This document shows positions 5,005-25,710 of a DNA stretch of 64,000 bases, in pieces. Under the pieces are notes generated by a model. It was given only the letters and a program-made list of their open reading frames with translations. It ran no database searches and was not told the origin of the DNA. A program made the position numbers and the translations under genes. The DNA lies in the IMG/VR virus record IMGVR_UViG_3300008113_000003, positions 124,001 to 188,000 of that record, one strand, 5' to 3'. Each line of letters opens with the position of its first letter. Within the stretch, counting starts at the first letter, position 1.

Positions 5005-5317
5005 AATACGCTACCCTGTTTTTTAATTTAGTCTCATACTCTCTTAATGTATCCTGTAATGGATATGGTACCCTAAGTGTGGTATTATCAGGTATTTCCC
5101 ATTCACTAGACGCTACATCTGGATTGGCCATTAAAATCAACCAACCGTAATATGGTACGGAATAATATTGCTGACTGATTTTATCCAACCTACTTTTACC
5201 TGTATTATATACGGTAAATAAATCGGTCGTTTTTTCAGTTAACTTAATAAACGGTGCGGATATGTGTTTTGAGTCACTATCCAATGTTTTGTATCTGTTA
5301 AAGTATCTAAGTGCCAT
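4997..5317 (-). CDS. Baseplate wedge protein, T4 gp53-like / LysM-like (106 aa)
   Basis: Motif RLDKISQQYY...GWLILMANP...IPDNTTLRVP, small size, and position after the tube-initiator-like giant gene. Confidence 0.6.
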   Translation of the reverse strand: MALRYFNRYKTLDSDSKHISAPFIKLTEKTTDLFTVYNTGKSRLDKISQQYYSVPYYGWLILMANPDVASSEWEIPDNTTLRVPYPLQDTLREYETKLKNRVAYYG

Positions 5318-5325
5318 ATTAATAA

Positions 5326-8300
5326 TTAATTAGAGAGCTCTGGGTAAAGTTCTGGGTAAAGTATTGATAATTGTGTTTGATCATTTTGTTTTATAGACTC
5401 AGCCTCATTTGTCGTACATAAGTTAATAATAGGATCATTCTTGTATTTTGTAAAGAGTTTTAGGTTTTTAACAATAACAGGATCTGGTTTACTTGTTTCT
5501 CTAAATGTTACTAAATAATCCTCTACACCACCTTTAAACAATTTAGCACGCATTTCTGATATACCCAATACTTTGTTTTGATTGTCAACACCAAAAACAT
5601 TTTTATTTATGTTTTTAATCGTATTGTCGTTTATATTTGACATATAACTCAGAACATCACCTAGATCAGCATCGTATTTTTTAACAAAACTCTCAATAAG
5701 TTTAAAGGTATCCTCAATTGATTTTTTTATCTTTTTCTTTTGAGCCTCTACATACGCTTCACTTCTTTTTGGGTCGTTTTTAATACTAGCTGGTGGGTTA
5801 ATACCAGTTTTTTCTATTTTAGCCATGATAGCCTCAATATGTGTTGGTTTATTTATGTATAAGTTATATAAAAACTCAATGAATAAAACCTCATGCATTG
5901 CTGACATTTTTACAGTTTCACCGTATGTTATACCAGTTGTTACACCAGTTGTTATACCACTTGTGGAACCACTAAAACCATTTAATTTAATTTTTTGTTG
6001 GTCTGGTAATGAATTAACATACTCTTCTGTTATGGTATAATCATAAGCCATTAAAGTGTTAAGATTTTTTAATTGCGTATTTAATGTTGTGCCAGTTATA
6101 TTAGGGTTGTTATCATTAAATAGGTAATAATTTATATCCTTTATAAAACTATTTTGTGAATTTGTTTTTTTGTTTACACCGTAATAGAACAAAATATTAG
6201 AAACTGTATCACCTGTTGTTGAACCAGTTGGGTTTAATGTTACACCAGTCAAATTATTAACTTGTAAATCAAATCCATAAGACGGTGTATAAGCTAAATC
6301 AATATCATTGTTTTTGCTCTCAAACTGGTCAGATAACATAACCTCTAAAGTCTTATTACTAAAATCTAAAACTTCATAGTTTATTTTTTCAAACGTATAT
6401 CTCATTTGATAAACACCATCGTTATACACGTTATTAGCTGTATTTGATATACTACCATCATTTGCTCTTGTAACTAAAGAGTATGAAGTTGTTTCTAGTG
6501 ATCTGGCACTATCTGTCGTACCATATTCATATGGGTTAAATGAAAAATTTTCACTTGTTATAGGACCAGTTACTGGTGGTGTTACCTGCCCAAACTTAAA
6601 GGTGTTTGTGGCAGTTGTTCCGTTAGAATCTAGTATATTATTTGTTGGTAAGAAGTTATCAAAATCGTATTGGTTTGGTAAATCATTAAGTGTTGTGTAA
6701 CCAAACACTTTTTTGATGTACTCCATGTTTCTATTGTACTCTTTTATTATATCATCAGATGCGCCATTATCTATGTTATTTTTCATTTGTTTAAAGAAAT
6801 ACAAACCATTACCTAATGAAGCATACTGATTTATCGTGAAACCAGTCGTTGGTGATAGAGAATTTGCGTCATTAATAATATTGTACACATCCGATAAACT
6901 AATTAAATTACCACCGTCTATTGATAATTTTTTGTACTCATCATAAGGGTTATAACCAAACATAGTACTACCAGTTACTGGCGTTTTTAATTTTTTACCA
7001 TTAGGTATTACTTCATATAATTTAGCCCTACCTTCTGAATACGTGGCATCATATCCGTACAATGGTAATGATAAACCAGCTAATACAACTGACATTTTGG
7101 CCACCGAATCATTTAAAGCGTTTATAGTTGTCTCATCATCCGCATCTTTTATAGACATGAATTTTGTATACTCAACATCAAAATAAGACGTAAAATCTTT
7201 AATGTGCTGTGTGTCTAAGTTTTTATAAAAAGATTTAAATGTTTTAAGAGTGTCATCAGGGCTAAACCAAAAAGCTAAAGTGTTTGTAGCGATTTTAGTT
7301 CTAAATTCGTCTTTAAATGAACTTATGATATCTCTATATATTTTTATACCGTTAGTGTCTCTAAAGAAAATACCACCTGTTTCAGATATACCATTAAAAT
7401 TATTAGTATACCCATTTGTAAAACTACCTTGGAAATATTTACTACTTCTACCATTGTTAGTGGCACCAGTTAATGCTGTAAAATTGTAAGGTAAACCTTT
7501 ACCGTCACCAATTTTAAACATGTATTCTTGTGGGTGTAAATTAAGTTTTAACGCCTCAAATTCCTCTGGTTTGTTATTATTCTTAGTTAAGAAAAACGGG
7601 TGTTGTCTAAACACGTCACCAAGTTCAAAATATCTTTTTTCTTCAGCAACGGTATTAAATATTTCTGAGTACGTTAACCCGCTAAGGCTTACGCTAGGGA
7701 TTGTAGTACCAGAGATATTATTAATTATTTCACCTATAGTTGTACCACTAACAGATAGAGGTTTTTTATAGTTTTTATTCTTTAATACATTATCAATAAC
7801 TTTATATTTGGCCGTTGGTGTGTTATTTAAACTTTCTTTTTTACCAACTAAACCACCAAAAGCTGTTATGTATTCACCAAAAGTTGTATACAATGAATCA
7901 AATAAATCATAATATTGTACATCATATCTTTGTATGTAATACCTACCATATTCTTGTCTAAATGCAAACTCACCAAAATTAGAGTGATCTATTGCTGTCC
8001 AAGTTGTTGTATCTGTTGGTAACGTTTTTGTATATACACCATTAACAATAGGGTACTGGCTAGCTTTTCTAACATAATATTGGCCTTGGTATATAACGCA
8101 AGTTTCCGCCTTGTATTCTTTGGTTGGGTCAAATGTTGTTGCTCCAGTTAAATAATGATAGTAAGTACCACCAGCTAATTTTGGTAGTAATCTTTCGCTA
8201 ACAACCCCAATTGTACCATAAGGTATTGGTAAATTTTCGGTTGAGGGTGTTATTAACTCAGCCGCTGCAACTATTGGTATTAAATCCAATGAATTTTCAG

Positions 8301-11300
8301 CAAAGAAATCTTGTTCTAGATTTATTAGATCTCTTTCTCTTCTATCTGTGTTAGCAAAAGTTCTTTCATCATACACATCAGTGTTGGCGTAATAGTTAAA
8401 TGTTAATGCATTTTGTAATTGATCAACATATCTTCTTAAACCTTGCCCACCAATATATTTAAACGACATGTTGACTTTCGCTAACATTGGTTGTACACCA
8501 ATACCTTCTGGGTTTAAATCCCATAATAAAGGATCATAACTAATATTTAAACTATTAACTATGATTTTTGTGTGGTAAAAATCACCAATTCTTAAAACAG
8601 AAACTGGTGGTCTACCAAATGCCGTATTTTTAGCGTCACAACCTGGAACACCAATATCCTTTGTGATTGTATCACCAGGTCTCATACATTGCTGTAAAAA
8701 GGTTAATCTTGCATTTAAACCCTCGGGTGTCATTGCATGAAAAGCTGGACTAAAATATTTTAATTTTTGTTTTAAACTATCAAAAATAATAGGTGATTCC
8801 TCTGATAAATAATCGAAATAATCACACTCAGTTAATAGTTTATTAAGTATTCTTTGCGCTATTTCTCTTTTTGTTACGTTTGTTGTTGGTACCTCTTCTT
8901 CACGATACAATGGTGGCGTTTCAGCTGGTGGTTCTTTTCTTTCTAAAGGTATTTCTTTTGGAATCAAAGTTGCGTTAATTTCAACCCTTCTAGCAAAAGA
9001 CGCTATAGGTGATAAATTACCACAAACAATATCAGCCTCTCTTCTGGAAACTTGTTGGAAAGGTGCCGTATTAACAGCTATACATGTACCAATAAGTTGA
9101 CTATTTATCGGTGAAGTAATTCCAGCTGGTACCGATGGTATAAAATTATTTTTTACTTTATCAAACTCATCATAAGTTTTAACCATATAATAAGTTTTGT
9201 TGTCACCATAACTTATTGGAAAATATTCTATACCAGCAGATGTTTTTAGTGGTCTACCGAATAAAGTTGTATACTCATTTGGTTCTGGGTTTGTCTGAAA
9301 TAAATCATCAAGTGTTTGACCTCTTGAGACAATATCAAAACTGATTTCTTGTTTAGAATTAATATCACCCCTTAAGATAACAATTTTTTTAGATTTTTCT
9401 AAGTCACCGTGTAGTTTATTAACATCCGCTTCAGTTAATATAGGTTCACCATTTATTGTATAACATTTAACGTCATCATCAGACATGACATCAAGTATTA
9501 ACCATTTTGTAACCGAAACAAATCTTCTTGATGCTAATTTATCATTATATCTTTGTAATTCCGCTAAGTTTTGACCAGGAGCTGATGGTGATGCGTGTGC
9601 AACCATACTAAATCTTAAGTTATAGTCTTTAGTGCTTGCATAATTTTTCGCTGAATAAGCTTTTGCAATGTTTAAATACTGTTCCTCATAACCATAAGAT
9701 TTTCCAGGATAAGTTTTTCTATCCGTAGTAAAAAAGTGTTGGTGTTCTTTTGCCGCATTTGTACCTATTGTGTAATCGTATCTAATCCAAGCCAATCTTT
9801 CTGATGGGTCTAAGTTAGAACCACCGCCAACAGCAACTTCTTTAAACTCAGAGTTTTGATCGAGTTTTTGTCCTCTAGCTAAATTTTGATAGATATCATA
9901 ATAATCAGAATATTTGTCAACGACAAAATTCGCTTGATTTTTATACGAATTTTTTTGTATAGGGATGTCATTCTCAAAAAATAAGTTAAATTGTGTTATC
10001 TTTTGGGTTTCTAATTTCGGGGTTTCTATCGTAATACCTTCTTGTTTAAAGCTACCTGATGATTCAACTTTGGTTCTTATTTTTTCATTTGGTAATCTAA
10101 TATCCAAATCAGATATAACCTTTTTAAAATACTCAATATCACTATCACTAAACACACCCCATATTCTAGCTAATTCAAAAATATCGTAATCTAAACAACC
10201 TGCCCAGAAAGCTGCTAATAATTCATCAACTTCACCATCTGTTAATTGAGCAAATTCTTTATCTACTAATAAGTTCATTATTGTTGGGTGATCGACAACT
10301 ATATCCCATGACAATGTGCCAGATCTTTCTGTGTTGTTGTAGGTATAAATTGGTTCTGGTCTACCTAAAAATTGGTGTGTTGTCCAGTTTGTTGTTGTAT
10401 CATCTGTGAATCTAATATTGTATGGCGGGAACCACATTATTCTACCACCATTAGCACCCTTTTCACAAGGTGGTAATTCATTAAATTGAGATGAATCTCT
10501 CCAAGCTAAATTCTCAATGGAGAACATATATTTTCTGGCCCTTTTCTCACCAAAAGCCTCAACAACAGCGTCTCCAAGACCATCACCTAACCTACCGTAA
10601 CCTTCGTTAACGTTAAGCGCTGATGGGTGTATATTTAAGTTTCCGTATCTATCCAATACAGAATTTCTTTCTTTTCTATTTAACTCTTTCCATCTAATAA
10701 GATCCGTTATCTTTGAAAATGGTTTTGCTTTTGTCCAGGCTCTACAAAGAGTAACCTCATTGTACATTCTTTCGTCATCTCTTTTACCAGCTGTATCTAA
10801 ACCAGGTACTAAATAAGTGTACCCGATAACCTCATCTTTTTTATTTTTTCTTGGTGTTTTAAACGGTGTAATAACCCCAGAGCTTTTTGGGGAAAAATGA
10901 TAACCATCGGTAAATTTAGTTTTAGTTTGGTCAATAGATCTTATTGCACGATTACTTGTACCAGATTTCAATAATTGTTGTGTAACCCCCATTATTGAGC
11001 AATCTCTAAATCTACCAGTTGAGGTTGGGTCATTTGGATCCCCGCCCATTGTTCTGGATAATATATCATCGTCAAGTTTACCTAAAGAATCCCATTTAAG
11101 TACACCATTTTTACCGTCTTCTATTGTCCAACGTTGTTCATCAGTGCTACCTCTCCAAATAAATGATGTTTGTATTGATCCGTATTTAGAAACATTTTCA
11201 ACACCTGGTTCTACATAATAATCAGGAACACCATCGTTTATTCTAATAGACCTTGTTAATTCACTATTACTCTTAACTTGTAAACCGTTATTATCTTGTA

Positions 11301-14091
11301 ATAAATTAAATATGCTAACATTTTTACCTGTTGTTATATAAGGTTTAAAAACAACGTCCTCAGTACCTTTTTGTGCTTTAGTTGTTCTTTCAAATATTCT
11401 TCTATCAGTAGCACCCATTTTACTTGTATAATCTGGGGAATATTTGTTATTACCTAAATTTGAAAATAGAAAAAATCTTTGTGATCTACCTGTTTCATCT
11501 AATCTATCAATAACCCTATTATCAAGTTTATTTTCAATATTTGAATCACCGAAACAAGATGGTCTTAAAACAATTGAGTCATCGGTAAAAAAAGCAGATG
11601 TTAAACCACCCAAACCACCAATGTCCGAAATAAAACTCGCTAATTTACCCAATCCACCTTTAAATGTTGTAATATCGGCATTACCCCTTTCAAGAATTGA
11701 TGATGGGTCTTTAATAAATTCAATAACTTTAAGTGGATTTGTTAACATGTCATCGATGGTTGTTAAACCAGCAACTTCTTGTGCACTTTTTGCTAATAAT
11801 CTTGTGTTTAAATGAAACTTTAATTCTAAAGCCGCTATTTGTGCTAATAAAGTGTCATTCTTTAAAGTTGGTTCTGTTAGTAAGTTTGCAATATCCAAAT
11901 CAGCGCCCAATAAAGCGCTTAACGGTGTTGATGCCGTTGGCACGTTTAAGAAATCACCCATTCTTATTTCTGTTGGATCGGCATTACTTAGCTTGTCTTC
12001 AGTAAGATATGGATTTTGTGGTGTGTTTGGGGCTTGATTTAGTAATAAATTTTGTAAAATTTCATATACAACAACGTTTTCCGCACCATATTTATTGGTT
12101 GTTATGTTAGTTGTGTAGTTTGGTGTTAAACCAGATAATTGAGCTTGGTTTGGTACAATAAAATCGTTTATAATTGTTTGTGAACCAACTGGTACAATAC
12201 CTGGATTAGCCAATGTAAACGCATCGGTTGGATCTGTTGGATCCTTAACCATGTTTTTGTTGAACAAGCTAATCATTATTGGTCCAGCTAACGTAACAAC
12301 ATCACCAGGGTTAACATTTGAAAATGTGCTTATTTGTGCTAAGGTACCTCTACCAGCCAAATATTGTGCAGCGATTGAAGCACTTGGTGATAAAGCTGTT
12401 AAACCAGCAGAAACATCCGCTGGCGTATTTAACGTCATTGATAAGTTCAATGTTCTTGGCGCAAGTGCGTCTGTTAATACATTACCAGGGTTAACAACAT
12501 TAAAGTTATTGATTGTTGTATCTAAACCTCTACCACCCAAATACTGTGTTGCTATTAAAGCTGATGGTGTTAAATCAAAAATACCAGTGGTGATATCAGC
12601 TGGCGTGCTTAAATTCATTGCAAGATCCAAAGTTCTTGGTGCAAGTGAATCAGTAACAACATTACCAGGGTTTACGTTTATAAAGTCATTGATAACACTG
12701 TCCAAACCTCTACCAGCCAAATACTGAGCGGCCAAAGCACCACTTAATGATGTAAGACCAGCTGTAATATCTGTAGGTGTATTGAGTGTATGTGAAAAGT
12801 TTAAGTTTCTTGGTATCACTGAATCAGTAACAACATTACCAGGATTTACGTTAGGTGATGTTGTAATTGCAACAAATGTACCTTTACCTGAAAGATATTG
12901 CGCAGCATAAGCACCACTTAAATTTGTCAACCCAGCCGTAATGTCGACTGGTGTATTTAATGTTTGTGCAAAGTTTTGTGTCCTTGGTGTAATAGCCTCA
13001 CTTAATACATCGCCAGGATTTACGTTAGGTGATGTTGTGATTGCAACAAATGTACCTTTACCTGAAAGATATTGTGCAGCTAAAGTAGAGTTGGGCGACA
13101 AATCATTTACACCTGCGGTAATATCCGTTGGTGTATTTAATGTTTGTGCAAAGTTTTGTGTTCTTGGTGTGATAGCATCTGATAAAACATCACCAGGGTT
13201 AACAACATTAAATGTGTTGATAACACTAAATGTTCCAAGTCCAGCCAAGTATTGAGCCGCATAAGCAGCGTTAGGTGTTAAATCATTTACGCCAGCGGTA
13301 ATGTCCGTTGGGGTACCAATATTCATAGCAAGATCTAAAGCTCTTGGTACGATGGCATCTGTTAATACATCCCCAGGGTTTATATTAGCAAATGTATTGA
13401 TTACAGTAAAAGCGCCTTTACCTGAAAGGTATTGGGCAGCGTAAGCCGCATTAGGTGTTAAATCATTTACACCAGCTGTAATATCCGTTGGTGTGTTCAA
13501 AGTCATGGCAAAATCCAAATTTCTTGGTGCCACGGCATCTGTTAACACATCACCTGGGTTTACGTTTACAAAATCATTTACAACGGTAAATGAACCTCTA
13601 CCTGAAAGGTATTGAGCGGCAAACGCAGCGTTAGGTGTTAAGTCATTTACACCAGCAGTAATATCTGTAGGTGTGTTTAATGTGTGTGATAAATCTAAAG
13701 TTCTTGGTGCAACAGCTTCTGTTAATACATCACCAGGGTTTAAGTTAGCAAAATCGTTTATAACTGTTAATTGACCCTTACTATTAACTAAAGCGGCAAC
13801 ATAAGCGCCACTCGCTGTCGTATCTAATAAACCAGCATTAATATCAACTGGTGTATTTAATGTTTTATTAAGATTAGCTATTCTTGCTGGTATGCCGTCT
13901 GTATCAACATTACCAGGGTTTTGTACATTATAAAAATGTATAGCAGCGTCTTGTCCTAACGAACTTAAATAAGCGTTAACTGTTACCGAATTAGTTAGAT
14001 TAACTAAACCAGTTACAACATCAGGTGGTGCTTGTAAATTTAAATTAAGGATCACGTTTCTAAACTGTCCCGATATACTATTTAAGCTCAT
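5326..14091 (-). CDS. Giant multidomain baseplate/tail protein (2921 aa): N-terminal 60-aa tandem repeats, tube-initiator (gp48/gp54-like) motifs and an OmpA-like segment
   Basis: Uninterrupted ORF; motifs FLGRPEPIYTYNNTERSGTLSWDIVVD, PPVSVLRIGDFY...QPMLAKVNMSFKYIG, AHASPSA...YNDKLASRRFVSV...RRVEI. Confidence 0.7.
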   Translation of the reverse strand: MSLNSISGQFRNVILNLNLQAPPDVVTGLVNLTNSVTVNAYLSSLGQDAAIHFYNVQNPGNVDTDGIPARIANLNKTLNTPVDINAGLLDTTASGAYVAALVNSKGQLTVINDFANLNPGDVLTEAVAPRTLDLSHTLNTPTDITAGVNDLTPNAAFAAQYLSGRGSFTVVNDFVNVNPGDVLTDAVAPRNLDFAMTLNTPTDITAGVNDLTPNAAYAAQYLSGKGAFTVINTFANINPGDVLTDAIVPRALDLAMNIGTPTDITAGVNDLTPNAAYAAQYLAGLGTFSVINTFNVVNPGDVLSDAITPRTQNFAQTLNTPTDITAGVNDLSPNSTLAAQYLSGKGTFVAITTSPNVNPGDVLSEAITPRTQNFAQTLNTPVDITAGLTNLSGAYAAQYLSGKGTFVAITTSPNVNPGNVVTDSVIPRNLNFSHTLNTPTDITAGLTSLSGALAAQYLAGRGLDSVINDFINVNPGNVVTDSLAPRTLDLAMNLSTPADITTGIFDLTPSALIATQYLGGRGLDTTINNFNVVNPGNVLTDALAPRTLNLSMTLNTPADVSAGLTALSPSASIAAQYLAGRGTLAQISTFSNVNPGDVVTLAGPIMISLFNKNMVKDPTDPTDAFTLANPGIVPVGSQTIINDFIVPNQAQLSGLTPNYTTNITTNKYGAENVVVYEILQNLLLNQAPNTPQNPYLTEDKLSNADPTEIRMGDFLNVPTASTPLSALLGADLDIANLLTEPTLKNDTLLAQIAALELKFHLNTRLLAKSAQEVAGLTTIDDMLTNPLKVIEFIKDPSSILERGNADITTFKGGLGKLASFISDIGGLGGLTSAFFTDDSIVLRPSCFGDSNIENKLDNRVIDRLDETGRSQRFFLFSNLGNNKYSPDYTSKMGATDRRIFERTTKAQKGTEDVVFKPYITTGKNVSIFNLLQDNNGLQVKSNSELTRSIRINDGVPDYYVEPGVENVSKYGSIQTSFIWRGSTDEQRWTIEDGKNGVLKWDSLGKLDDDILSRTMGGDPNDPTSTGRFRDCSIMGVTQQLLKSGTSNRAIRSIDQTKTKFTDGYHFSPKSSGVITPFKTPRKNKKDEVIGYTYLVPGLDTAGKRDDERMYNEVTLCRAWTKAKPFSKITDLIRWKELNRKERNSVLDRYGNLNIHPSALNVNEGYGRLGDGLGDAVVEAFGEKRARKYMFSIENLAWRDSSQFNELPPCEKGANGGRIMWFPPYNIRFTDDTTTNWTTHQFLGRPEPIYTYNNTERSGTLSWDIVVDHPTIMNLLVDKEFAQLTDGEVDELLAAFWAGCLDYDIFELARIWGVFSDSDIEYFKKVISDLDIRLPNEKIRTKVESSGSFKQEGITIETPKLETQKITQFNLFFENDIPIQKNSYKNQANFVVDKYSDYYDIYQNLARGQKLDQNSEFKEVAVGGGSNLDPSERLAWIRYDYTIGTNAAKEHQHFFTTDRKTYPGKSYGYEEQYLNIAKAYSAKNYASTKDYNLRFSMVAHASPSAPGQNLAELQRYNDKLASRRFVSVTKWLILDVMSDDDVKCYTINGEPILTEADVNKLHGDLEKSKKIVILRGDINSKQEISFDIVSRGQTLDDLFQTNPEPNEYTTLFGRPLKTSAGIEYFPISYGDNKTYYMVKTYDEFDKVKNNFIPSVPAGITSPINSQLIGTCIAVNTAPFQQVSRREADIVCGNLSPIASFARRVEINATLIPKEIPLERKEPPAETPPLYREEEVPTTNVTKREIAQRILNKLLTECDYFDYLSEESPIIFDSLKQKLKYFSPAFHAMTPEGLNARLTFLQQCMRPGDTITKDIGVPGCDAKNTAFGRPPVSVLRIGDFYHTKIIVNSLNISYDPLLWDLNPEGIGVQPMLAKVNMSFKYIGGQGLRRYVDQLQNALTFNYYANTDVYDERTFANTDRRERDLINLEQDFFAENSLDLIPIVAAAELITPSTENLPIPYGTIGVVSERLLPKLAGGTYYHYLTGATTFDPTKEYKAETCVIYQGQYYVRKASQYPIVNGVYTKTLPTDTTTWTAIDHSNFGEFAFRQEYGRYYIQRYDVQYYDLFDSLYTTFGEYITAFGGLVGKKESLNNTPTAKYKVIDNVLKNKNYKKPLSVSGTTIGEIINNISGTTIPSVSLSGLTYSEIFNTVAEEKRYFELGDVFRQHPFFLTKNNNKPEEFEALKLNLHPQEYMFKIGDGKGLPYNFTALTGATNNGRSSKYFQGSFTNGYTNNFNGISETGGIFFRDTNGIKIYRDIISSFKDEFRTKIATNTLAFWFSPDDTLKTFKSFYKNLDTQHIKDFTSYFDVEYTKFMSIKDADDETTINALNDSVAKMSVVLAGLSLPLYGYDATYSEGRAKLYEVIPNGKKLKTPVTGSTMFGYNPYDEYKKLSIDGGNLISLSDVYNIINDANSLSPTTGFTINQYASLGNGLYFFKQMKNNIDNGASDDIIKEYNRNMEYIKKVFGYTTLNDLPNQYDFDNFLPTNNILDSNGTTATNTFKFGQVTPPVTGPITSENFSFNPYEYGTTDSARSLETTSYSLVTRANDGSISNTANNVYNDGVYQMRYTFEKINYEVLDFSNKTLEVMLSDQFESKNNDIDLAYTPSYGFDLQVNNLTGVTLNPTGSTTGDTVSNILFYYGVNKKTNSQNSFIKDINYYLFNDNNPNITGTTLNTQLKNLNTLMAYDYTITEEYVNSLPDQQKIKLNGFSGSTSGITTGVTTGITYGETVKMSAMHEVLFIEFLYNLYINKPTHIEAIMAKIEKTGINPPASIKNDPKRSEAYVEAQKKKIKKSIEDTFKLIESFVKKYDADLGDVLSYMSNINDNTIKNINKNVFGVDNQNKVLGISEMRAKLFKGGVEDYLVTFRETSKPDPVIVKNLKLFTKYKNDPIINLCTTNEAESIKQNDQTQLSILYPELYPELSN
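12313..13920 (-). repeat. Nine tandem coding repeats of 174-180 bp (58-60 aa), consensus NPG(D/N)V(L/V)TDA..PR.L....TLNTP.DITAG...L......AAQYL.G.G....IN.F.NV
   Basis: Aligned directly from the translation; each unit starts with NPG; partial units flank both ends. Confidence 0.95.
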
Positions 14092-14129: not shown

Positions 14130-16889
14130 TTATATCGGTGAAATACCAAAATCAACAATATAATTTGCGGTACCACCATCATTTTGTGACATAGTTCTTT
14201 TTATCCATTCACCCATCATAACAGGATCTGAATCATAAAACTCTTTAGCGTTTATTTTTTGTACCCCGCTTTTAGTTTTTGCTTCAATCTCTCCATTCAC
14301 AACAACTGTAATTGTTTGTTCACTAGAGTTAGTAGCGTTTGAATACTTATTGGCGTTTAATTCTGAAATTAACGCCATTGCTGATCCAGCATTTCCAGAT
14401 AATATTTTACCGTTTGATAAAGCCAAAGCATCTTGCACTTGTGACATTTCAGCACCCATTGATTCAGGTACAGCATCGAGACCAGCTAATTCTAAGAATT
14501 TTCTATCCGTATAACCACCACCTTTTAAAGCTTCAGTTGTTAAAGCTTGTTTATATTCATTACCACCAGTAAAAGCGTCAGCAAAATCAGCACCGCTTCT
14601 TCTAAATCTTGCACCAGACGTTTGATAAAAATCTTGTGCAACACTTTCCATACCCATGGCTGAAGTAACTAATCCACCAGCGCCATCAAGAACACCCATA
14701 ATACCATTACCTAGTCCACCAAAAAAATCACCAAAAAAAGAAGAATCTTCATCTTCCTTTCTAAAGTTTTTTACGATTTCTGTTAAAGCACCTTTATTAT
14801 CAATACCAATATTTTCTGTTATTTTTCTTGTTTTTTCATCACCCATTTCCATTTTAATACCAGCTTTCCATAAAGATTCACCAACGTATGGCACCTCTTT
14901 CATAGATTTAAGTATTTCACCAAAAATAACTTTTACGTATGGCATAACACCATCTAAAACAAAACGTATAACTTTATCGAATATGGTACCTATTTTATCA
15001 AAAAAGCTTTTGTTTTTATCACCCATAATAGCTCTTATGTCTGTAATAAAACCCTTAAAACCAGCTAAAAACATATCCATACCAGTTCTAAATTTACCAC
15101 CTGGGCTAAATAAGTCCCTCATAAGCGGTATTAATGTTGCGGCTATTTCTTTACCTAAGGTTTCAATTTCATTTAATAACCCACTATCAGCTAAAAGCTT
15201 ATTTAATTCCGTAAATAAAGGTGTTAAACCAATTGCGAATCTTTCTAATATATTATTAAATCTGTCCTGTAAGGTTAATCTTTGTTTTGCAGCTTCGTCA
15301 TTAGCGGTTCTTTGTGCTAATATTTGTTTTAATTGATCTTGGCTTGTTATGTTACTAACTAATTGGCTAACACCGTTAGCCATTTTAATTTCATATTGAC
15401 CTTTATCGTTGACTGTCATTAAATTAGCCAATGCCTGTTGGTCGTCATCGCTAAAACCGATTAAAGAACCTGTAGTTTTTGTTAAGTTATTTAATTTGTC
15501 AGCTGTTTTAGCTTGCTCTATACCAGCATTAACAATATCATCATAATTTTGTCCAAGTGCTTCAGCGGTCTCTCTTAATATTTGACGTTGCGCTGGTGGT
15601 ATTATAAAATCACCATTTTTGTTTTTAATAGCTAAACTTTTTGCTGAAGTTATTAATTTTTCGGCCATACCGTCCGCATTGTTCATCGAATCGTACATTA
15701 ATTGGAACGGGTCACCAAACATTTGTGCAAACTCACCACCAAGAACTTGTATCTTAGCCGCAGCTTCTACGGCCTTTTCTGGGCTAAAAAAAGCATCTTT
15801 AAATGATTTAATTGATTCGGCTAAGTTAAATCTTAATGATTCGGCTTTAGCGGCTAGTTTTGTTAAACCCTCAACGCTTCTACCAAAACCAGACCCTGTT
15901 AAAGCTTTAACAACATCTGTTGTTGTTTGTAATAATTTTGTTTGATTAATATTAAATCTAGCAGCTTCATTTCTACCTTTTTGGGCAACTTTAAGTGTTG
16001 TACCTAATGAATATCCAACATTATCAAATTCAGCAACCATTTTGGTTATACCCTCAACAGCTAATCCAGTACTATTACCAAGATTAACAATATCAGTAAT
16101 TTCTTTAGTACTAAAAATTCTGTTTTTACCAGTTGCTTCACTAAAGCCTTTTATGATCTTGCCAACGTCTTCTATTTTACCACCATACTCGAGTATTTCG
16201 TTGTATATTGTCGGCATTGCATCTAATAACTGGTAATACTCTTTACTCGTCATACCAATATCAGCGGATAAGGCACCTACGACTTTTTGCATTTCCAAAA
16301 ACAATTTCCAAGCTCTTTCTATTGGGAAGATGATTTTAAAAATTGCTTTACCAATATCCCAAGCAACACCCAAAATACTACCAAACAAACTAAATAAACC
16401 ACCAAATATGTTAGTTAATGTACCACCAACTTTACCAAATAAATCAAATGCTTTACCCAAACCACTTACGGAACCTTTAGCTGTTTGATAATTTACTTCT
16501 TGTATTTCTTTTTCAAGTTCCTTTTGTTCTTTTTTCTTTTTAACTAATTTAGCCGCTTCTTTATTACCCCTTTTTTCAAGTTCGTTAGCAACTTTACCCA
16601 GATTAACAATTTCATCTTCGGTTTTTTTAAGATTTTTCTTAGCTTTTTTAAGGTTATCAGCATCTTCAGCCATTTCCTTGGCAAATCTTTTTAAATTACC
16701 CCATATTGATTGTGTTTTTAAATCCCACTCTCTACCAGCAGCCTTTTTAGCATTTATGGCATCATACATAGACAACATCTTATTGATGTGGTCCTCTTCT
16801 TGTTGTTGGCTTATAATACCCTTTTTTCTGGCATCTGTTAACTTGTTTAAAGCCCCGTCCAAATTGTTAAAAAAATCCGCTTGCGCCAT
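14130..16889 (-). CDS. Tape-measure-like protein, paralog 1 (919 aa)
   Basis: Ala/Gly/Lys-rich helical composition with amphipathic FGGLFSLFG-type stretches; lies downstream of tube and chaperone genes. Confidence 0.7.
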   Translation of the reverse strand: MAQADFFNNLDGALNKLTDARKKGIISQQQEEDHINKMLSMYDAINAKKAAGREWDLKTQSIWGNLKRFAKEMAEDADNLKKAKKNLKKTEDEIVNLGKVANELEKRGNKEAAKLVKKKKEQKELEKEIQEVNYQTAKGSVSGLGKAFDLFGKVGGTLTNIFGGLFSLFGSILGVAWDIGKAIFKIIFPIERAWKLFLEMQKVVGALSADIGMTSKEYYQLLDAMPTIYNEILEYGGKIEDVGKIIKGFSEATGKNRIFSTKEITDIVNLGNSTGLAVEGITKMVAEFDNVGYSLGTTLKVAQKGRNEAARFNINQTKLLQTTTDVVKALTGSGFGRSVEGLTKLAAKAESLRFNLAESIKSFKDAFFSPEKAVEAAAKIQVLGGEFAQMFGDPFQLMYDSMNNADGMAEKLITSAKSLAIKNKNGDFIIPPAQRQILRETAEALGQNYDDIVNAGIEQAKTADKLNNLTKTTGSLIGFSDDDQQALANLMTVNDKGQYEIKMANGVSQLVSNITSQDQLKQILAQRTANDEAAKQRLTLQDRFNNILERFAIGLTPLFTELNKLLADSGLLNEIETLGKEIAATLIPLMRDLFSPGGKFRTGMDMFLAGFKGFITDIRAIMGDKNKSFFDKIGTIFDKVIRFVLDGVMPYVKVIFGEILKSMKEVPYVGESLWKAGIKMEMGDEKTRKITENIGIDNKGALTEIVKNFRKEDEDSSFFGDFFGGLGNGIMGVLDGAGGLVTSAMGMESVAQDFYQTSGARFRRSGADFADAFTGGNEYKQALTTEALKGGGYTDRKFLELAGLDAVPESMGAEMSQVQDALALSNGKILSGNAGSAMALISELNANKYSNATNSSEQTITVVVNGEIEAKTKSGVQKINAKEFYDSDPVMMGEWIKRTMSQNDGGTANYIVDFGISPI

Positions 16890-16942: not shown

Positions 16943-19516
16943 TTATGAATTGTAGACCATTTGATTTATTATTTGTTTAGATACAATATTCGTTGCATCT
17001 TTAACACCATTATTATCCAAATCATGTTTTGTTAAATCTATTGTACCAGTTAAATTTAATTTAACAACTGGTTTTTTTACTGAAGCAATTTGATTAGCTT
17101 TTTCGTCAAAAAATAAAATAGCGTCATCTTTTCTACCTTGTAATAATTGACCATTTGCAAAAACAACAGGCCTTGTTGGATCAAATAAGGTTACACCAAA
17201 TTGACTTTCTTTTTTAAAGGGTATATTTACGTTTGATGAATTTTGACCATAATTCATAAAACTAGGTGTGGGTATCATCGTATTCGGTTCATTTTTTTTA
17301 ACACCTTTATTGGCATCCTCAATTTTTGTTTTTAAGTCTGTTAATTTACCTAAATCAATTTTATCTTCAATATCATCGGTAGAATCGTTATATTGTATAA
17401 TATCGTTAATTAAGCCAGGTAAAGCTTCTTTCGCTAAAAAACTGTCTTGGCCACCAGATAAAACACCCTTTTCTTTCATTTTTAATCCATAACTTCTCAT
17501 TGAGTCGGATTCAAAAAAGCTACCAAGACCTTCTATAATTGTACCCGATGCGTATTGAAAATATGGGACAATGTCACTAACAAAAAAGCCTAAAATTAGC
17601 GCACCAGATTCACCAATTTTTTGACCGATGTCTTTTTTAGGGTCTTTAAAAATATTAAATATTTTACCAAATAAATCCGTTAAAATTGTTAAACCGTGCA
17701 TAATAGTTTCACGAAAAGAACCAGAGCTAGAAAATATACCATGTATAAATTCAATCATACCAGTTGATATGTCTTTGACCAAACTATCAAGATCACCAAT
17801 TGTATTATGGTTATTAAAAAGATTATTTAATTCAACAAAAAATTGTGAAAATCCGATTGAGAATCTATCGAGTACAATTGATAATCTTTCCGCCAATGTT
17901 TTTCTAAGTAACGCAGACTGTTCGTTTTTTCTCTCTTGATTTAAAATACCATATATTTCTGAGGTGCTTGGGGTTTCAGATAAATTTTGTATAACCCCAT
18001 TTGATAACCTTATACTATAAGATCCATCTTCATTCATTGTCATTAGGTTTGTCAATAAATCTTTTTGGTCATCATTTAAACCAAATGTCGCTACACCTCT
18101 TTTTCTTAAAGCTTCTATTTTATCCTCATATTTAGCATCCTCAATCGCTGCGTTAAATAATTCGTCAGCATCTTGGTTCATTGCCGTTGCAAACTCCCTA
18201 ATTAATTCACGATCAGCTGGTGATATTTGAAATCCGTTTTTACCTTTAAAAGCCTTACCTTTAACAACTTCCATTAAATCAGCTGTTAACTGTAAAGGGT
18301 CTTCAATACTTTTAGCCATCAACATCATTGGGTCGCTAAAATAAAAAGCAAATTTACCGCCAAGTAATCTGGCTGTTGCAGCCGCCTCAATTGCTGTTTC
18401 TGGATCAGTAAAAGCGTCTTTAAACGCCCCTACACTTTTTTTAACATCAATTCTAGCTTTTTGGGTTTTGATAATTAGTTTGGTCATACCTTCTAAACCC
18501 TTCTCAATACCAAAACCAGTTAATTCAACAACCAATTCACCAGCTTTCTTAAGAATCGTTGTTTGGTTTTGAGAAACCGACATTGATTTGTTTCTAACAA
18601 AATCGGTGAATTTTAATGTTCTGTCTAAAGAATATCCAAGGTTTTCAAAATTACCTATAAGTTCACCAGCAGCATCAACACCAAGCCCTGTACCTAAACC
18701 TAGCTCAATTATTGATTTAAATTCAGTACCACTAAAAACTCTATTCCTGTTTGTTAATCTATTATAGGCATCGTAAGCCTCACCAACTTGCTCAATGGTA
18801 CCACCAACATCTAAAACTTCGTTCATTATTGTTGGCATCTGATCTAAAAAATTTTTAGATTCACTTGCAATTAAGCCAGAGTCAGCCGCAACACGACCAA
18901 CCAATCTTTGCATTTCTAAAAATTTTTCATAAACCGCAGCAACCCCAAATTCAAAATCAAGTAAATTTTTTGCAAAAGAAAAAGCAACTTTTACGATACT
19001 TAAAGCTACTCTAAATAAAGCTTTTAAAGCACTCCACGCTAATTTAGCAACAAGCATTATTATTACCACATATGGGTTACCACCTTTGGCGCTTGATTGA
19101 ACAGAATCAGCAACGTCATCCATTGCATCTTTAATATTTTTTTCAATTTCAAGTTGTACCCTTTTTTTAAATAGCTCTTGGCTTAATTGCGTTTTATTAT
19201 CTTTTATCGCCTCGTTTTCTTTTTCTTTAAAAAGGTTTATTTGATCTTGAAGAAATATTAAATTTTCCTTTCTTTTTTGTCTTTCTTTATATAGTTTATG
19301 TTTTTCAGCTTGGATTCTTTTAAAATAAGCGTATAAACCCTCATTCTTAGAATCCCATCTATACATTTCTTTTTTCTGGGCAATAGCATCGTTATACGCA
19401 TCAATTACATCTTGTACGTACCCCTCAATCATTTGTTGTGAATCGGTTGAAGCTGCTGTGTTAACTTGCAACTTTTTAACCATTTCATCTATCGCTGATG
19501 CTATATCCCCTTGCAT
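16943..19516 (-). CDS. Tape-measure-like protein, paralog 2 (857 aa)
   Basis: Colinear similarity to paralog 1 (LEMQ...MPTI.NE.L..GG.IE.VG; FKDAF..PE.A.EAAA....LGG.FA..F.DP). Confidence 0.7.
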   Translation of the reverse strand: MQGDIASAIDEMVKKLQVNTAASTDSQQMIEGYVQDVIDAYNDAIAQKKEMYRWDSKNEGLYAYFKRIQAEKHKLYKERQKRKENLIFLQDQINLFKEKENEAIKDNKTQLSQELFKKRVQLEIEKNIKDAMDDVADSVQSSAKGGNPYVVIIMLVAKLAWSALKALFRVALSIVKVAFSFAKNLLDFEFGVAAVYEKFLEMQRLVGRVAADSGLIASESKNFLDQMPTIMNEVLDVGGTIEQVGEAYDAYNRLTNRNRVFSGTEFKSIIELGLGTGLGVDAAGELIGNFENLGYSLDRTLKFTDFVRNKSMSVSQNQTTILKKAGELVVELTGFGIEKGLEGMTKLIIKTQKARIDVKKSVGAFKDAFTDPETAIEAAATARLLGGKFAFYFSDPMMLMAKSIEDPLQLTADLMEVVKGKAFKGKNGFQISPADRELIREFATAMNQDADELFNAAIEDAKYEDKIEALRKRGVATFGLNDDQKDLLTNLMTMNEDGSYSIRLSNGVIQNLSETPSTSEIYGILNQERKNEQSALLRKTLAERLSIVLDRFSIGFSQFFVELNNLFNNHNTIGDLDSLVKDISTGMIEFIHGIFSSSGSFRETIMHGLTILTDLFGKIFNIFKDPKKDIGQKIGESGALILGFFVSDIVPYFQYASGTIIEGLGSFFESDSMRSYGLKMKEKGVLSGGQDSFLAKEALPGLINDIIQYNDSTDDIEDKIDLGKLTDLKTKIEDANKGVKKNEPNTMIPTPSFMNYGQNSSNVNIPFKKESQFGVTLFDPTRPVVFANGQLLQGRKDDAILFFDEKANQIASVKKPVVKLNLTGTIDLTKHDLDNNGVKDATNIVSKQIINQMVYNS

Positions 19517-20338: not shown

Positions 20339-20587
20339 TTATCTTCTTCCAGCTTTCGCTTTATTCATCTCTCTTTCTCTTGCTTCTTTTATTTTTTCGT
20401 TTTCTTCCATCAAGATATCAATAAATTTCCTTCTCTCAAAAACTGGCATAACCATTACGTCTGAATAAGTAAAATTAGCATGCTTAACCAATATGTACGA
20501 TTCGTACATCATTTGGTTTCTATACTCATACGTAAGGCCAAAGAAATTTGGCTGTAATAGGAAGTTCACCAAAAAAAAACTCTCCAC
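20339..20587 (-). CDS. Small tail-chaperone-associated ORF; either a 57-aa gene from ATG 20512 or the C-terminal extension of a frameshift product
   Basis: Overlaps the 3' end of the chaperone gene in the +1 frame; motif FTYSDVMVMPVFERRKFI. Confidence 0.6.
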   Translation of the reverse strand: MESFFLVNFLLQPNFFGLTYEYRNQMMYESYILVKHANFTYSDVMVMPVFERRKFIDILMEENEKIKEAREREMNKAKAGRR

Positions 20588-21284
20588 TTGGAGCTTCTAC
20601 ATTAATGGTCAAATCAAGACCTGGTTCGTTATCTGATAAGTGCTTCCTAAATTCAGCAGAATCCATTGGTGACATAGTGTCAATGAACTGGGCAATTGCA
20701 GCCTTTTCTCTAATACCATCAACTTCAGTGATTTGACTTTGTAATCTAAGTGTCATCAATTGGCTAATAGCGTTTGAACCCATCTTTTTGGTTCTTGCCT
20801 GATCCTCTTTAACCAATTTATCATCCTCATCAGATGTCAAATATCTAAACTTAACTGTTTTCTTACACTTTGGTAGTGTAAATGAACATTCACCGTTTTC
20901 ATCTGGTTGTAAACTATTTTCTTTTGTTGGTAATTGACTAATATCAATATCCTCGATAAATTTTTCCCCTGTTTTAGGGTCTGTTAATTCCACTGGGTAA
21001 ATTTCACCATAACCTGTGGCTCTCAAAAAGAAGATAATAGCGTTTCTATCACCTGGTAATAATTGTCCAGCTTTGATATCTTTATCTAAAATCTTTTTTT
21101 CCAATAAAATATCTAACACCTTACCACTTTGCAATAAGTTTGGTGATGTCAAAATGTTTTCATCAGCAGCGGTCATATACGCAACCTTAATGGTGTCTTT
21201 TTTATTTTTGTAAAATTTACCACCTGAAGGTAAACCAATTACGTCATGTGCTGGTTCAAAGTAAACTTGTTGTCCGTTATCCAT
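20526..21284 (-). CDS. Tail/baseplate assembly chaperone (T4 gp26-like) (252 aa)
   Basis: LPSGGKFY...VAYMTAADENIL...GDRNAIIFFLRATGYG...LPITAKFLWP; located between the tube and tape-measure genes. Confidence 0.65.
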   Translation of the reverse strand: MDNGQQVYFEPAHDVIGLPSGGKFYKNKKDTIKVAYMTAADENILTSPNLLQSGKVLDILLEKKILDKDIKAGQLLPGDRNAIIFFLRATGYGEIYPVELTDPKTGEKFIEDIDISQLPTKENSLQPDENGECSFTLPKCKKTVKFRYLTSDEDDKLVKEDQARTKKMGSNAISQLMTLRLQSQITEVDGIREKAAIAQFIDTMSPMDSAEFRKHLSDNEPGLDLTINVEAPSGEFFFGELPITAKFLWPYV

Positions 21285-21853: not shown

Positions 21854-22342
21854 TTAGTAAACCAATATACAACGGTCCATTCTTAATGTTGCGGTGATAT
21901 CTGCGATTTCGTCATCGCTGTATTCTAACGATCCAAAGTCAACGTTGGTCATAAATGTACCTTGAAGGATCCATTTTTCCACAACAACACCTGTTGGATC
22001 AAGCATTTCTAATTCAATATCTTTTTTATAACCAGCAGCGTAACCCATTCTACCTGTTACAGATTCAGCGTGTAGACGAACCCATTCCATTAATGCTTGA
22101 GCAGCTGAAGGACCAATAGGGTCTTTAAACGTAACGTCAATAGCATCCCAAGTAAATCTACCAGCAACCCAAGTAGATGTATTTAAGAAAGGAATCTCAA
22201 CTTCGTTTATTGCAATTTTTGGTCTTGACGTAGAGATTACAAACCACTCGTTAATTCCAAGTGAGCTTGGGAATCTTAAAATAAACCTGTTCTTTCTTTT
22301 TGGTTCGTAAGGAACAGGCATTTTCATTAATAAGTTAGCCAT
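21854..22342 (-). CDS. Tail tube protein (T4 gp19-like) (162 aa)
   Basis: YEPKRKNRF...RPKI...EIPFLN...AGRFTWDAIDVTFKDPI...MLDPTG.VVEKW.L.G...DFGSLEY; directly downstream of the sheath gene. Confidence 0.9.
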   Translation of the reverse strand: MANLLMKMPVPYEPKRKNRFILRFPSSLGINEWFVISTSRPKIAINEVEIPFLNTSTWVAGRFTWDAIDVTFKDPIGPSAAQALMEWVRLHAESVTGRMGYAAGYKKDIELEMLDPTGVVVEKWILQGTFMTNVDFGSLEYSDDEIADITATLRMDRCILVY

Positions 22343-25600: not shown

Positions 25601-25710
25601 AAGGTTTCACCCACTACACCTAATGTTGTAACACCAACTGTCTCAGTTGTGAATGTTAAATCTTTTTCGGTTGTGTAGACACCTGGAGATGCATAAACTT
25701 TGTTTGCCAT
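22645..25710 (-). CDS. Contractile tail sheath protein (T4 gp18-like) (1021 aa)
   Basis: N-terminal SPGVYTTEKD...VGETLKGPAF; C-terminal YYPW...PWFATAGYNRG...INP...WGNRNLQ..SSALDRLNIRRLL...EFIEL. Confidence 0.95.
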   Translation of the reverse strand: MANKVYASPGVYTTEKDLTFTTETVGVTTLGVVGETLKGPAFQPIFIRNFDEFKTTFGGTNPEKFKNTQIVKYELPYIAKQYLTQSNQLYVTRLLGLSGYDAGMAWVIKTLGACDESTLSHTGITQTTINFKVDTNNNSFYVTGNSGNTDLIDYIANLTGVATTDFDTVFNQFFTTVGSYINADFYNGNALYWGLLTDDMDTDLTVDAATHGITPVYIDAYELPFTVPTSDRDAYILNNELAYNTATETYSGPSFALYCHTFTGAGAHTLNGKLELFTVTLTADPFAEGHNKNVATVRSRGTYTSDVLGYKVNSLDMVAPTGVVNDPYLAFDLTGTTANPTGGTFSYTVSLDSTKSNYIKKVIGTTPSDKDSQIYVEEVYDNSLKFGWLSGKIKGLYSELTSVNNWDHYRFQYQSPVTPFFVSELRGGLPQRLFRLISISDGTSANTEIKASIANVDLSKKTFDIYIRSFSDTDRAVSIIEKFVDCTMDESLDNFVGRKIGTIDNKYPLKSAYVVLEMAVNAPTDGVPAGFEGYEFRTNSASGYTATAVPEMPYKLKYYAPGDTIYNPPFANATVSSGDRVTKNYLGFSSQFGFDKDLLLFKGKISILGDNAYNTGDDYTTKTKGFHMDINASTIVDSVTGEQVFAVGVASFVDPIVVDGTTTHPYNNMRTRKFTALFAGGFDGWDAYRVNRTNTDEYKIGRTGFVAGTFDTFTNVEYAELFGTSDYYATMYGIRTFQNPEETAINILATPGIDVLNNTDLVRDAIEVVEEKRLDAIYLPTLPDIKLLNNNNPSDTENWYFAEDIVDELENTDIDSNYTAVYYPWIQITDTDNNANLYIPPTAEVVRNMAYTDNVAFPWFATAGYNRGLVKCNRARIVLDQEARDILYPGRINPLATYSDVGVVIWGNRNLQVKSSALDRLNIRRLLLQARRLIMSVSKRLLFDPNDTTVRNQFLSLVNPILDNIRKERGLTDFRVSVAMDVEDNDRNTLKGKIFIKPTPTLEFIELEFTVTPQNVSFDNI

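What the first reader, a model, noticed from the sequence alone, without database searches (positions are those of the whole stretch)
12313..13920. Nine tandem 58-60-aa repeats at the N-terminus of the giant baseplate protein
Seen: nine colinear NPG-initiated units with conserved TP.DI.AG and AAQYL.G.G, plus degenerate flanking units. The tract looks more GC-rich than the rest of the window. I do not recognise the repeat family. Inference: an expandable beads-on-a-string module forming a fibre or stalk, or a lattice/adhesin array, whose copy number may vary between related phages.
Basis: partly seen in the sequence, partly recalled or inferred. Interest (0 to 1): 0.6.

Follow-up and report, generated by a model that had tools for sequence, protein, structure and literature searches.

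The report
New 60-residue repeat array, phage tail giant
A giant tail protein of an uncultured freshwater jumbo phage starts with nine copies of a 60-residue module matching no described family; relatives carry one to nine copies, so it looks like a length-adjustable structural arm, but its fold and function remain unknown.

Summary
Nine in-frame units of 58-60 aa fill window 12313-13920 on the minus strand. That is residues 58-593 of a 2921-aa ORF (5326-14091). A degenerate half-unit lies before the array and a truncated unit after it. It is not an assembly expansion.

The unit matches nothing in Pfam, PHROGs, NCBIfam or PDB sequences. A profile search of 1.84 billion proteins found it only at the N-termini of orthologous 2000-2900-aa phage proteins, or fragments of them.

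Copy number varies: 1-4 (often degenerate) in most lineages, 8-9 in one clade. Two independent one-unit changes occurred in the middle of the array, while the end units stay positionally orthologous.

The array is under purifying selection (dN/dS 0.10-0.22, at or below the rest of the protein). Its higher GC comes from amino-acid composition alone, since GC3 is unchanged.

The host protein follows two tape-measure-like genes. It carries an OmpA-like domain and weak tube-like fold signals, so a baseplate or tail-tip location is plausible but unproven.

AlphaFold2 and ESMFold2 gave no confident fold. The function, an adjustable structural arm, is inferred.

The parts
5326..14091 (-). Giant ORF, 2921 aa (P0001). 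Structural protein of the tail-tip or baseplate region that hosts the repeat array.
   Evidence: Orthologues of 2000-2900 aa. Conserved synteny.
13921..14091 (-). N-terminal cap, residues 1-57. The first ~25 aa (S..FR..L..NL..P) are shared with the wider 1600-aa family. Residues 11-56 are a degenerate half-unit.
   Evidence: HMM 23 bits. N-termini of IMG/VR relatives. dN/dS 0.06-0.10.
12313..13920 (-). Array of nine tandem units, residues 58-593. Unit starts are at nt 13920, 13740, 13560, 13380, 13200, 13020, 12846, 12672 and 12492. Seven units are 60 aa and units 6-7 are 58 aa.
   Evidence: Unit tree. dN/dS.
12208..12312 (-). Truncated, degenerate tenth unit (NPGDVVT... then diverging), residues 594-628. 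It forms the junction to the body of the protein.
10159..10746 (-). Conserved core block 1, residues 1116-1311. It holds the family signatures S[IL]ENLAW[RK] and GR[IV]MWFP. It is possibly the first half of a tail-tube-like beta-sandwich.
   Evidence: Invariant columns. Patterns found in at least 592 IMG/VR contigs. Weak tube-like matches at Z about 4 and weak BFVD matches to contractile-injection tube proteins (E 0.13-0.44).
8959..10023 (-). Confidently modelled insertion, residues ~1357-1711, containing an OmpA/PAL/MotB-like peptidoglycan-binding domain. The YN..L..RR motif lies at residues 1515-1523.
   Evidence: Profile against PDB: top 10 hits all OmpA-like, E 0.012-0.6. VIA-align: ranks 1-21 nearly all OmpA-like, Z 5-6.9. 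Pfam OmpA in homologues, E about 1e-4.
8284..8874 (-). Conserved core block 2, residues 1740-1936. It is possibly the second half of the tube-like domain.
14130..16889 (-). Tape-measure-like protein, 919 aa, directly upstream of the giant gene. It is assigned by position and composition only.
   Evidence: Helix-rich composition with a hydrophobic stretch. Paralogue of the 857-aa protein. No family hit.
16943..19516 (-). Second tape-measure-like paralogue, 857 aa.
   Evidence: 34% identity over 683 aa, E 1e-109
20526..21284 (-). Baseplate hub-type protein (Pfam T4_baseplate, PHROG 150).
21854..22342 (-). Tail tube protein (gp19-like).
22645..25710 (-). Tail sheath protein.

Best explanation
The tract is a lineage-specific tandem amplification of a previously undescribed module of about 60 residues. 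The module is probably mostly alpha-helical. It sits between a conserved N-terminal cap and the body of a giant tail-tip or baseplate-region structural protein. The phage is an uncultured freshwater T4-like jumbo myophage.

Shown: the ancestral state in the family is the cap plus 1-3 units, and one clade amplified this to 8-9. Duplication, loss or gene conversion continues in the middle of the array, while the first and the last three units stay positionally orthologous. Every unit is held under purifying selection as strong as that on the conserved core.

Inferred: the array is a folded, modular arm or strut. Its length, set by the unit number, fixes how far the conserved N-terminal cap sits from the hub-proximal body of the protein. 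The role is structural and length-adjusting, not catalytic.
For: Anatomy and register.

Restriction of the unit to the N-termini of orthologous giants: only 25 hits among 1.84 billion representatives, and all credible ones start near residue 58-64 (75 in a protein with an N-terminal extension) of 2000-2900-aa proteins or their fragments.

Copy number: 9 in P0002-P0013, 8 in P0014 and P0016, 2 in P0017-P0025, about 4 degenerate in P0026 and P0032, and 1-3 elsewhere.

Unit tree: u1, u7, u8 and u9 are orthologous across homologues. The middle units cluster within lineages, and the two 8-unit proteins each lack a different middle unit.

Purifying selection: dN/dS in the array is 0.095-0.22, against 0.16-0.31 for the rest of the protein and 0.14-0.28 for the core.

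Hydrophobic spacing of i, i+1, i+4, i+5 and conserved N-cap-like NPGD and TPxD motifs fit short helices. The low-confidence AlphaFold2 secondary structure agrees.

Tail-tip or baseplate context.

The N-terminal region is a hotspot for such expansions. Two other branches of the wider family (L030, L073) carry 7-8 copies of an unrelated ~54-aa unit where typical members have about two.
Against: No fold could be obtained: AlphaFold2 gave pLDDT 42 and ESMFold2 gave pLDDT under 50. 'Arm or strut' therefore rests on analogy with other phage tail repeat arrays and on the selection pattern.

The location of the protein in the virion is inferred from gene order and from weak fold matches. There are no proteomic or imaging data.

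The 8-9-unit state is one clade, so copy-number change has been observed only a few times.

The expansion co-occurs with a duplication of the tape-measure-like gene. That could point to a role inside the tail instead.
Confidence: 0.55

Rival explanations
1. Multivalent adhesin: each unit is a small binding domain for a repetitive host-surface polymer, and amplification raises avidity.
For: Tandem small domains on phage tail and baseplate proteins often bind surface carbohydrates weakly (established knowledge of Ig-like, BIG2 and FN3 decorations). The most conserved positions recur identically in every unit, as expected for a repeated binding site. The protein also carries other envelope-directed parts: an OmpA-like domain and a weak CBM5/12-like motif.
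Against: There is no match to any carbohydrate-binding or Ig-like family. dN/dS is as low as in the core, and the array is conserved unit for unit between phages that differ by 30-40% elsewhere. That is unlike typical receptor-binding regions. The composition is acidic, Lys-poor and aromatic-poor, which is unusual for glycan binders.
Confidence: 0.2
2. Ruler accessory: the helical N-terminal array runs up the tail-tube lumen or along the tail tip together with the tape measure. Its expansion is coupled to the duplication of the tape-measure-like gene.
For: The giant gene directly follows the tape-measure-like genes. The 8-9-unit clade has two such paralogues in the window, L008 and L009. The 2-unit clade has one in L004 and L007. 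Tandem units in tape measures are known to tune tail length (PMC3271669, PMC5099701, PMC13585406). The combination of helical propensity and very low pLDDT resembles tape measures.
Against: The co-occurrence is a single phylogenetic event on each side, so it is no evidence of coupling. Most family members have only 1-3 units, and the wider family has none, so the module cannot be a general ruler. Tape measures usually tolerate sequence drift, whereas these units keep Gly/Pro/Asn turn motifs typical of compact folds.
Confidence: 0.15
3. The array is an assembly expansion, or the units belong to a well-described repeat family with a fixed copy number.
For: One homologue (P0015) has a scaffold gap of N inside its array, so the region can trouble assemblers. 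Logan contigs break at 12866-13158.
Against: Units differ at 18-46% of nucleotides. The longest exact repeat is 35 nt. Independent contigs tile the array colinearly. Eleven other protein clusters show the same nine units. There is no hit in Pfam, PHROGs, NCBIfam or PDB. Copy number is not fixed.
Confidence: 0.03

Closest known systems
Tandem Ig-like / BIG2 / FN3 decoration domains on phage tail, baseplate and fibre proteins (own knowledge of the families)
   Same: These are small modules repeated head to tail in virion structural proteins. Their number varies between related phages, and their roles are structural or weakly adhesive.
   Different: The unit here has 58-60 aa and a helix-type hydrophobic pattern, not a ~90-aa beta-sandwich. 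It matches no such Pfam family. It occurs only at the N-terminus of one protein family and is under strong purifying selection.
Repeat units of tail tape measure proteins that tune tail length (PMC3271669, PMC5099701, PMC13585406)
   Same: Both are helical-looking tandem units with gain and loss in the tail module, and the gene here lies next to the tape-measure-like genes.
   Different: The host protein is not the tape measure. It is mostly non-helical by composition, carries an OmpA-like domain and a conserved core, and its wider family lacks the units altogether.
Tube-initiator or hub proteins that combine a tube-like domain with a peptidoglycan-binding domain (T4 gp53/gp48/gp54, Afp7/Pvc7 with LysM; own knowledge)
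   Same: The protein has a conserved split domain with weak tube-like fold matches and an inserted peptidoglycan-binding-type domain. It is encoded just after the tape-measure-like genes.
   Different: The inserted domain is OmpA-like, not LysM. The protein is 10-20 times larger. The tube-like assignment rests on Z of about 4 in low-confidence parts of the model.
OmpA/PAL/MotB peptidoglycan-binding domain (Pfam PF00691)
   Same: The fold match has Z 5-6.9 over 100-134 residues. The N..L..RR motif is invariant or nearly so. Pfam OmpA hits occur in 4 of 27 homologues, plus L025.
   Different: All hits fall below Pfam's gathering score. The Asp of the usual GHTD motif is not conserved (A.ASP.AP instead). 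This domain concerns the body of the protein, not the repeat.

Membership tests
Known protein repeat or domain families (Pfam-A, PHROGs, NCBIfam) | Significant profile match of the unit or the array | tested here: not met
   The best Pfam hit is DUF5642 (E 0.001, 19 bits against a cut-off of 26). PHROG hits have no significant stretch, and NCBIfam gives nothing relevant.
Any solved structure (PDB sequences) | Sequence or profile match of the unit | tested here: not met
   phmmer with the whole protein and hmmsearch with the 62-unit profile both returned 0 hits, even at E up to 10.
Ig-like / FN3 / BIG2 phage decoration domains | A beta-sandwich domain of ~80-100 aa recognised by Pfam | tested here: not met
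   There is no Pfam hit. The unit has 58-60 aa and helix-type hydrophobic periodicity. The fold itself could not be modelled.
Tail tape measure protein | A long, predominantly alpha-helical protein encoded between the tube or chaperone genes and the hub, with length proportional to tail length | tested here: not met
   The giant protein has 33% helix-forming residues, against 43-45% in the two upstream candidates. It lies downstream of those candidates. Tail length is not testable here.
OmpA-like peptidoglycan-binding domain (body of the protein) | The beta-alpha-beta-alpha-beta-beta fold | tested here: met
   VIA-align ranks 1-21 are nearly all OmpA/PAL/MotB-like domains, with Z 5-6.9 and 100-134 aligned residues in the confident part of the model (pLDDT 80-93).
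OmpA-like peptidoglycan-binding domain (body of the protein) | Conserved ligand-contacting Asp (GHTD) and Arg (N..L..RR) motifs, and a Pfam score above gathering | tested here: inconclusive
   N1516, L1519 and R1523 are invariant, and R1522 is at least 90% conserved. The Asp position reads A.ASP.AP instead. Pfam OmpA reaches 23.6 bits against a cut-off of 27.2.
Tail-tube-like fold (gp19 / Hcp / gp27 tube domain) | A beta-sandwich superposable on tube proteins | tested here: inconclusive
   Matches have Z 3.7-4.3 to P1, SPP1, SaPI1, Pa193 and Bas63 tail chains, and Foldseek E of 0.1-0.5 to contractile-injection tube proteins. All fall in model parts with pLDDT under 50.
Virion baseplate component | Presence in the particle at the baseplate | not testable with these tools
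   The only evidence is conserved gene order in the tail module.

The most novel reading that the evidence does not exclude
The N-terminal region of a very widespread but wholly uncharacterised tail-tip protein family acts as a general adjustable-length element. The family occurs in at least 592 IMG/VR contigs and in none of the GenBank phages. Different lineages have independently filled this region with unrelated tandem modules. One is the 60-aa NPG unit described here, amplified to 8-9 copies together with a duplicated tape-measure-like gene. The other is a 54-aa YGP unit amplified to 7-8 copies elsewhere. On this reading, unit number would set a physical dimension of the injection machinery, such as the reach across a thick envelope or capsule. 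It would be a second ruler beside the tape measure, built on a new fold.
Probability: 0.15. Interest if true: 0.65.

Novelty: new variant of a known kind. Interest (0 to 1): 0.45.

Why it matters
Tandem-module arrays are a known way for phages to tune the size and reach of tail parts. This unit belongs to no described family. It is confined to one position in one giant protein, and it is strongly conserved. The protein family that hosts it is common in environmental viral contigs and absent from sequenced cultured phages.

If the unit number sets a dimension of the tail tip, these phages offer a natural series (1, 2, 4, 8, 9 units) for studying how contractile tails adapt to host envelopes. 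On a practical level, the unit profile (A1) and the core signatures give annotators a handle on a large unannotated protein family.

Tried and rejected
- AlphaFold2 on residues 1-357, using a 29-row alignment that included shifted windows, gave mean pLDDT 42. It was unusable for fold search, and only its secondary-structure trend is mentioned.
- Complex prediction with three copies of a three-unit segment (ESMFold2) gave 'no answer': score 0.00 and fold pLDDT under 50. This is no evidence for or against oligomerisation.
- The ESM Atlas feature search on the array had recognition below the useful range and returned only unnamed clusters.
- The GenBank phage collection gave no DNA or protein match for the array or for the core.
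- Foldseek against PDB with the 861-residue core model gave nothing significant. The atlas shape search returned only unnamed viral clusters with TM of 0.22 or less.
- Pfam, PHROGs and NCBIfam gave nothing for the two tape-measure-like proteins, the 979-aa and 687-aa downstream proteins, or the 106-aa ORF. PDB sequence searches of the 106-aa and 979-aa proteins also gave nothing.
- The idea that the NPG unit and the YGP unit of L030 and L073 are homologous is rejected (hhalign probability 0.1%).
- The idea that the GC excess marks foreign origin is rejected, because GC3 is equal.
- Low-scoring hits of the big search (P0035, P0047-P0051) share only a 13-residue L-[ST]-T-P-[FY]-D-[IV]-[ST]-x-G motif in other repeat contexts. 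They were not taken as relatives.
- A backward 'joint' in run X17 (13212 to 12518, 13 letters between) sits on a contig of higher depth than the phage. It was left unexplained and not counted as a copy-number variant.
- A literature search for a described giant baseplate repeat protein in jumbo phages found nothing relevant.

Full report
**Source and context**

The window is part of a 206-kb IMG/VR virus record that CheckV estimates at 69% complete. GC is about 32%. The minus strand between roughly 1 and 27100 carries a contractile-tail module.

- The module includes a sheath (22645-25710, PHROG 23), a gp19-like tube (21854-22342) and a T4_baseplate/PHROG 150 protein (20526-21284).
- Next come two paralogous proteins of 857 and 919 aa. 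They are helix-rich, contain a hydrophobic stretch and match no family. I read them as tape-measure candidates from position and composition only.
- Then follow the 2921-aa ORF 5326-14091, a 106-aa ORF, a 979-aa ORF and the start of a further large ORF.
- The same order recurs in relatives. There the last large protein (1640-2500 aa) carries Peptidase_M23, DUF2272 or Hydrolase_2 hits.
- The plus strand holds a helicase, a DNA polymerase, the large terminase and the portal.
- The nearest cultured terminase is that of Flavobacterium phage vB_FspM_immuto, at 30% identity.
- The DNA occurs in lake, river, freshwater, subsurface and 'fungus' metagenome runs from 14 studies.

**The observation**

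- Nine NPG-initiated units of 60, 60, 60, 60, 60, 58, 58, 60 and 60 aa occupy residues 58-593. This corresponds exactly to nt 13920-12313.
- A unit HMM scores each unit at 92-116 bits. It also detects a degenerate half-unit at residues 11-56 and a truncated tenth start at 594.
- Across 62 units from 12 proteins, P2, G3, T23, P24 and D26 are invariant. N1, V5, R13, L21, I27, G30, L34, Y44, L45, G47, G49 and I54 are at least 90% conserved.
- Units are 38-86% identical at the protein level and 54-82% at the DNA level.
- The longest exact internal DNA repeat is 35 nt.
- Logan contigs from four independent runs tile the region colinearly, breaking only around that 35-nt repeat.
- Eleven other protein clusters have the same nine units.
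- One homologue that looked N-terminally truncated (P0015) has a run of N inside its array. Such arrays can trouble scaffolding, but the window's copy is sound.
- The higher GC is real (0.386 vs 0.322) but lies entirely at codon positions 1 and 2, and GC3 is 0.207 vs 0.203. It reflects an Ala/Thr/Gly/Pro-rich, Lys/Glu-poor composition.

**What the unit is**

- The unit matches nothing in Pfam, PHROGs or NCBIfam. It matches nothing among PDB sequences either, even as a profile at E up to 10.
- A profile of 62 units was run against 1.84 billion representative proteins. Only 25 proteins scored E of 0.001 or better.
- Every credible hit places the units at about residue 58-120 of a 2000-2900-aa protein with the same N-terminal cap, or of a fragment of one. 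The family is thus confined to one position in one protein family.
- The hydrophobic columns follow an i, i+1, i+4, i+5 spacing. Conserved NPGD and TPxD motifs look like helix N-caps.
- The low-confidence AlphaFold2 model also draws three helices and a short strand per unit.
- Neither AlphaFold2 (pLDDT 42) nor ESMFold2 (pLDDT under 50) gives a usable fold, so the fold is unknown.

**Evolution of the array**

Copy number varies between relatives:

| Copies | Proteins |
|---|---|
| 9 | P0002-P0013 |
| 8 | P0014 and P0016 |
| 2, plus degenerate remnants | the 2450-2540-aa clade, P0017-P0025 and P0028 |
| about 4, degenerate | P0026 and P0032 |
| 1-3 | the other 50%-identity representatives |

- In a unit tree, the first unit and the last three units are positionally orthologous across the 8- and 9-unit proteins. 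The middle units cluster within lineages: u5/u6 of the window's protein, u2/u3 and u6/u7 of P0006, and u2/u3 of P0012 and P0013.
- The two 8-unit proteins, which belong to different sub-lineages, each lack a middle unit. The array therefore turns over in its middle.
- Selection is purifying. dN/dS in the array is 0.095, 0.20, 0.22 and 0.18 against four orthologues. The corresponding values are 0.16-0.31 for the rest of the protein and 0.14-0.28 for the conserved core.
- The youngest paralogous pair (units 5 and 6) has dS 0.48 and dN/dS 0.29.

**The host protein**

- A 27-sequence full-length alignment shows two very conserved blocks (residues 1116-1311 and 1740-1936) around a more variable insertion.
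- The full-length profile finds only OmpA-like domains in the PDB. The top 10 hits are all OmpA-like, with E 0.012-0.6.
- AlphaFold2 models residues ~1359-1714 with pLDDT 80-93.
- An exhaustive structural comparison ranks OmpA/PAL/MotB/TagL-type peptidoglycan-binding domains first. Ranks 1-21 have Z 5-6.9 and 100-134 aligned residues.
- Pfam OmpA appears just below threshold in five homologues.
- The two conserved blocks are modelled poorly. They give repeated weak matches to tail-tube, tail-completion and baseplate chains (Z about 4) and to contractile-injection tube proteins.
- Together with the position right after the tape-measure-like genes, this suggests a hub-proximal or tail-tip protein with a tube-like domain interrupted by a cell-wall-binding domain. 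That arrangement is reminiscent of LysM-bearing tube initiators (own knowledge). It remains a lead, not a demonstrated membership.

**A wider family**

- Scanning IMG/VR with two core signatures found at least 592 viral contigs encoding relatives. The GenBank phage collection has none.
- The typical relative is 1570-1790 aa. It shares the first ~25 residues of the cap but has no NPG unit at all.
- Two relatives of about 2000 aa (L030, L073) carry 7-8 tandem copies of a different ~54-aa unit at the same place. Ordinary members have about two copies there.
- Profile-profile comparison finds no relation between the two unit types. The N-terminal region of this family has therefore been lengthened by tandem amplification at least twice, with unrelated modules.

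**Interpretation**

- The anatomy and evolution are shown. The function is inferred.
- The best-supported reading is a folded, modular structural arm whose unit number sets the distance between the conserved cap and the body of a tail-tip or baseplate protein (confidence about 0.55).
- A multivalent adhesin (0.2) is not excluded. It fits poorly with the low dN/dS and the lack of any binding-domain signal.
- A ruler-type role with the tape measure (0.15) is suggested only by the co-occurrence of the expansion with a duplicated tape-measure-like gene: three loci against two, but a single event on each side.
- An artefact or a known family is excluded.
- The unit is a new family within a known kind of phage architecture. 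It is moderately interesting in itself, and more so because the host protein family is abundant and entirely uncharacterised.

Noticed in passing
window 14130-16889 and 16943-19516 (-); L008 4532-9972; L009 4230-9968; L004 7276-9984; L007 7054-9987: The 8-9-unit clade has two paralogous tape-measure-like genes (34% identity, E 1e-109). The 2-unit clade has one. This co-occurs with the repeat expansion, but it is a single event on each side.
   Followed up: partly
window 8959-10023 (-), residues ~1357-1711 of the giant protein: An OmpA/PAL/MotB-like peptidoglycan-binding domain is inserted between the two most conserved blocks of the protein. Those blocks give weak tail-tube-like fold matches.
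   Followed up: partly
L030 3457-4602 and L073 3517-4455: Other branches of the same protein family carry 7-8 tandem copies of an unrelated ~54-aa unit (LYV.N.YGP...SN.G.Y) at the same N-terminal place. Typical members have about two copies.
   Followed up: yes
IMG/VR loci L010-L089: The conserved core (S[IL]ENLAW[RK], GR[IV]MWFP) occurs in at least 592 IMG/VR viral contigs, mostly in 1570-1790-aa proteins. It has no match in 50,697 GenBank phage records.
   Followed up: partly
window 21401-21802 (+): A 133-aa ORF lies on the opposite strand between the tube and baseplate genes. It has a Vsr-type endonuclease hit (Pfam E 4.5e-5, below cut-off). An ORF of the same size and orientation is kept in relatives (L004, L008, L009).
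   Followed up: no
window 4997-5317 (-): A conserved 106-aa ORF sits just after the giant gene. Its middle part looks LysM-like to the eye, but there was no Pfam hit and only an E 2.4 PDB hit to a LysM protein. This is an untested lead.
   Followed up: partly
window 5920-5970 (-), residues 2708-2724: A Thr/Ser-Gly micro-repeat ((T/S)TG(x) units) near the C-terminus varies in length and position among homologues. It is longer in P0005 and P0012, also seen in P0010, found elsewhere in P0017, and absent in several others.
   Followed up: no
window 8071-8133 (-), residues 1987-2007: A weak CBM5/12-like carbohydrate-binding motif (Pfam E 0.1, far below threshold).
   Followed up: no
P0049-P0051 (hits): The 13-residue L-[ST]-T-P-[FY]-D-[IV]-[ST]-x-G motif of the unit also recurs in ~53-aa repeats of unrelated bacterial proteins. 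This is probably a convergent local motif.
   Followed up: no
L003 about 2850-2950: In one metagenome scaffold, the array of a close homologue is interrupted by a run of N. This made the gene caller report an N-terminally truncated protein (P0015).
   Followed up: yes
window 12251-12727 and 12941-13255 (+): Antisense ORFs of 158 and 104 aa lie inside the array. There is no evidence that they are genes. They are probably a by-product of the repeat's composition.
   Followed up: no
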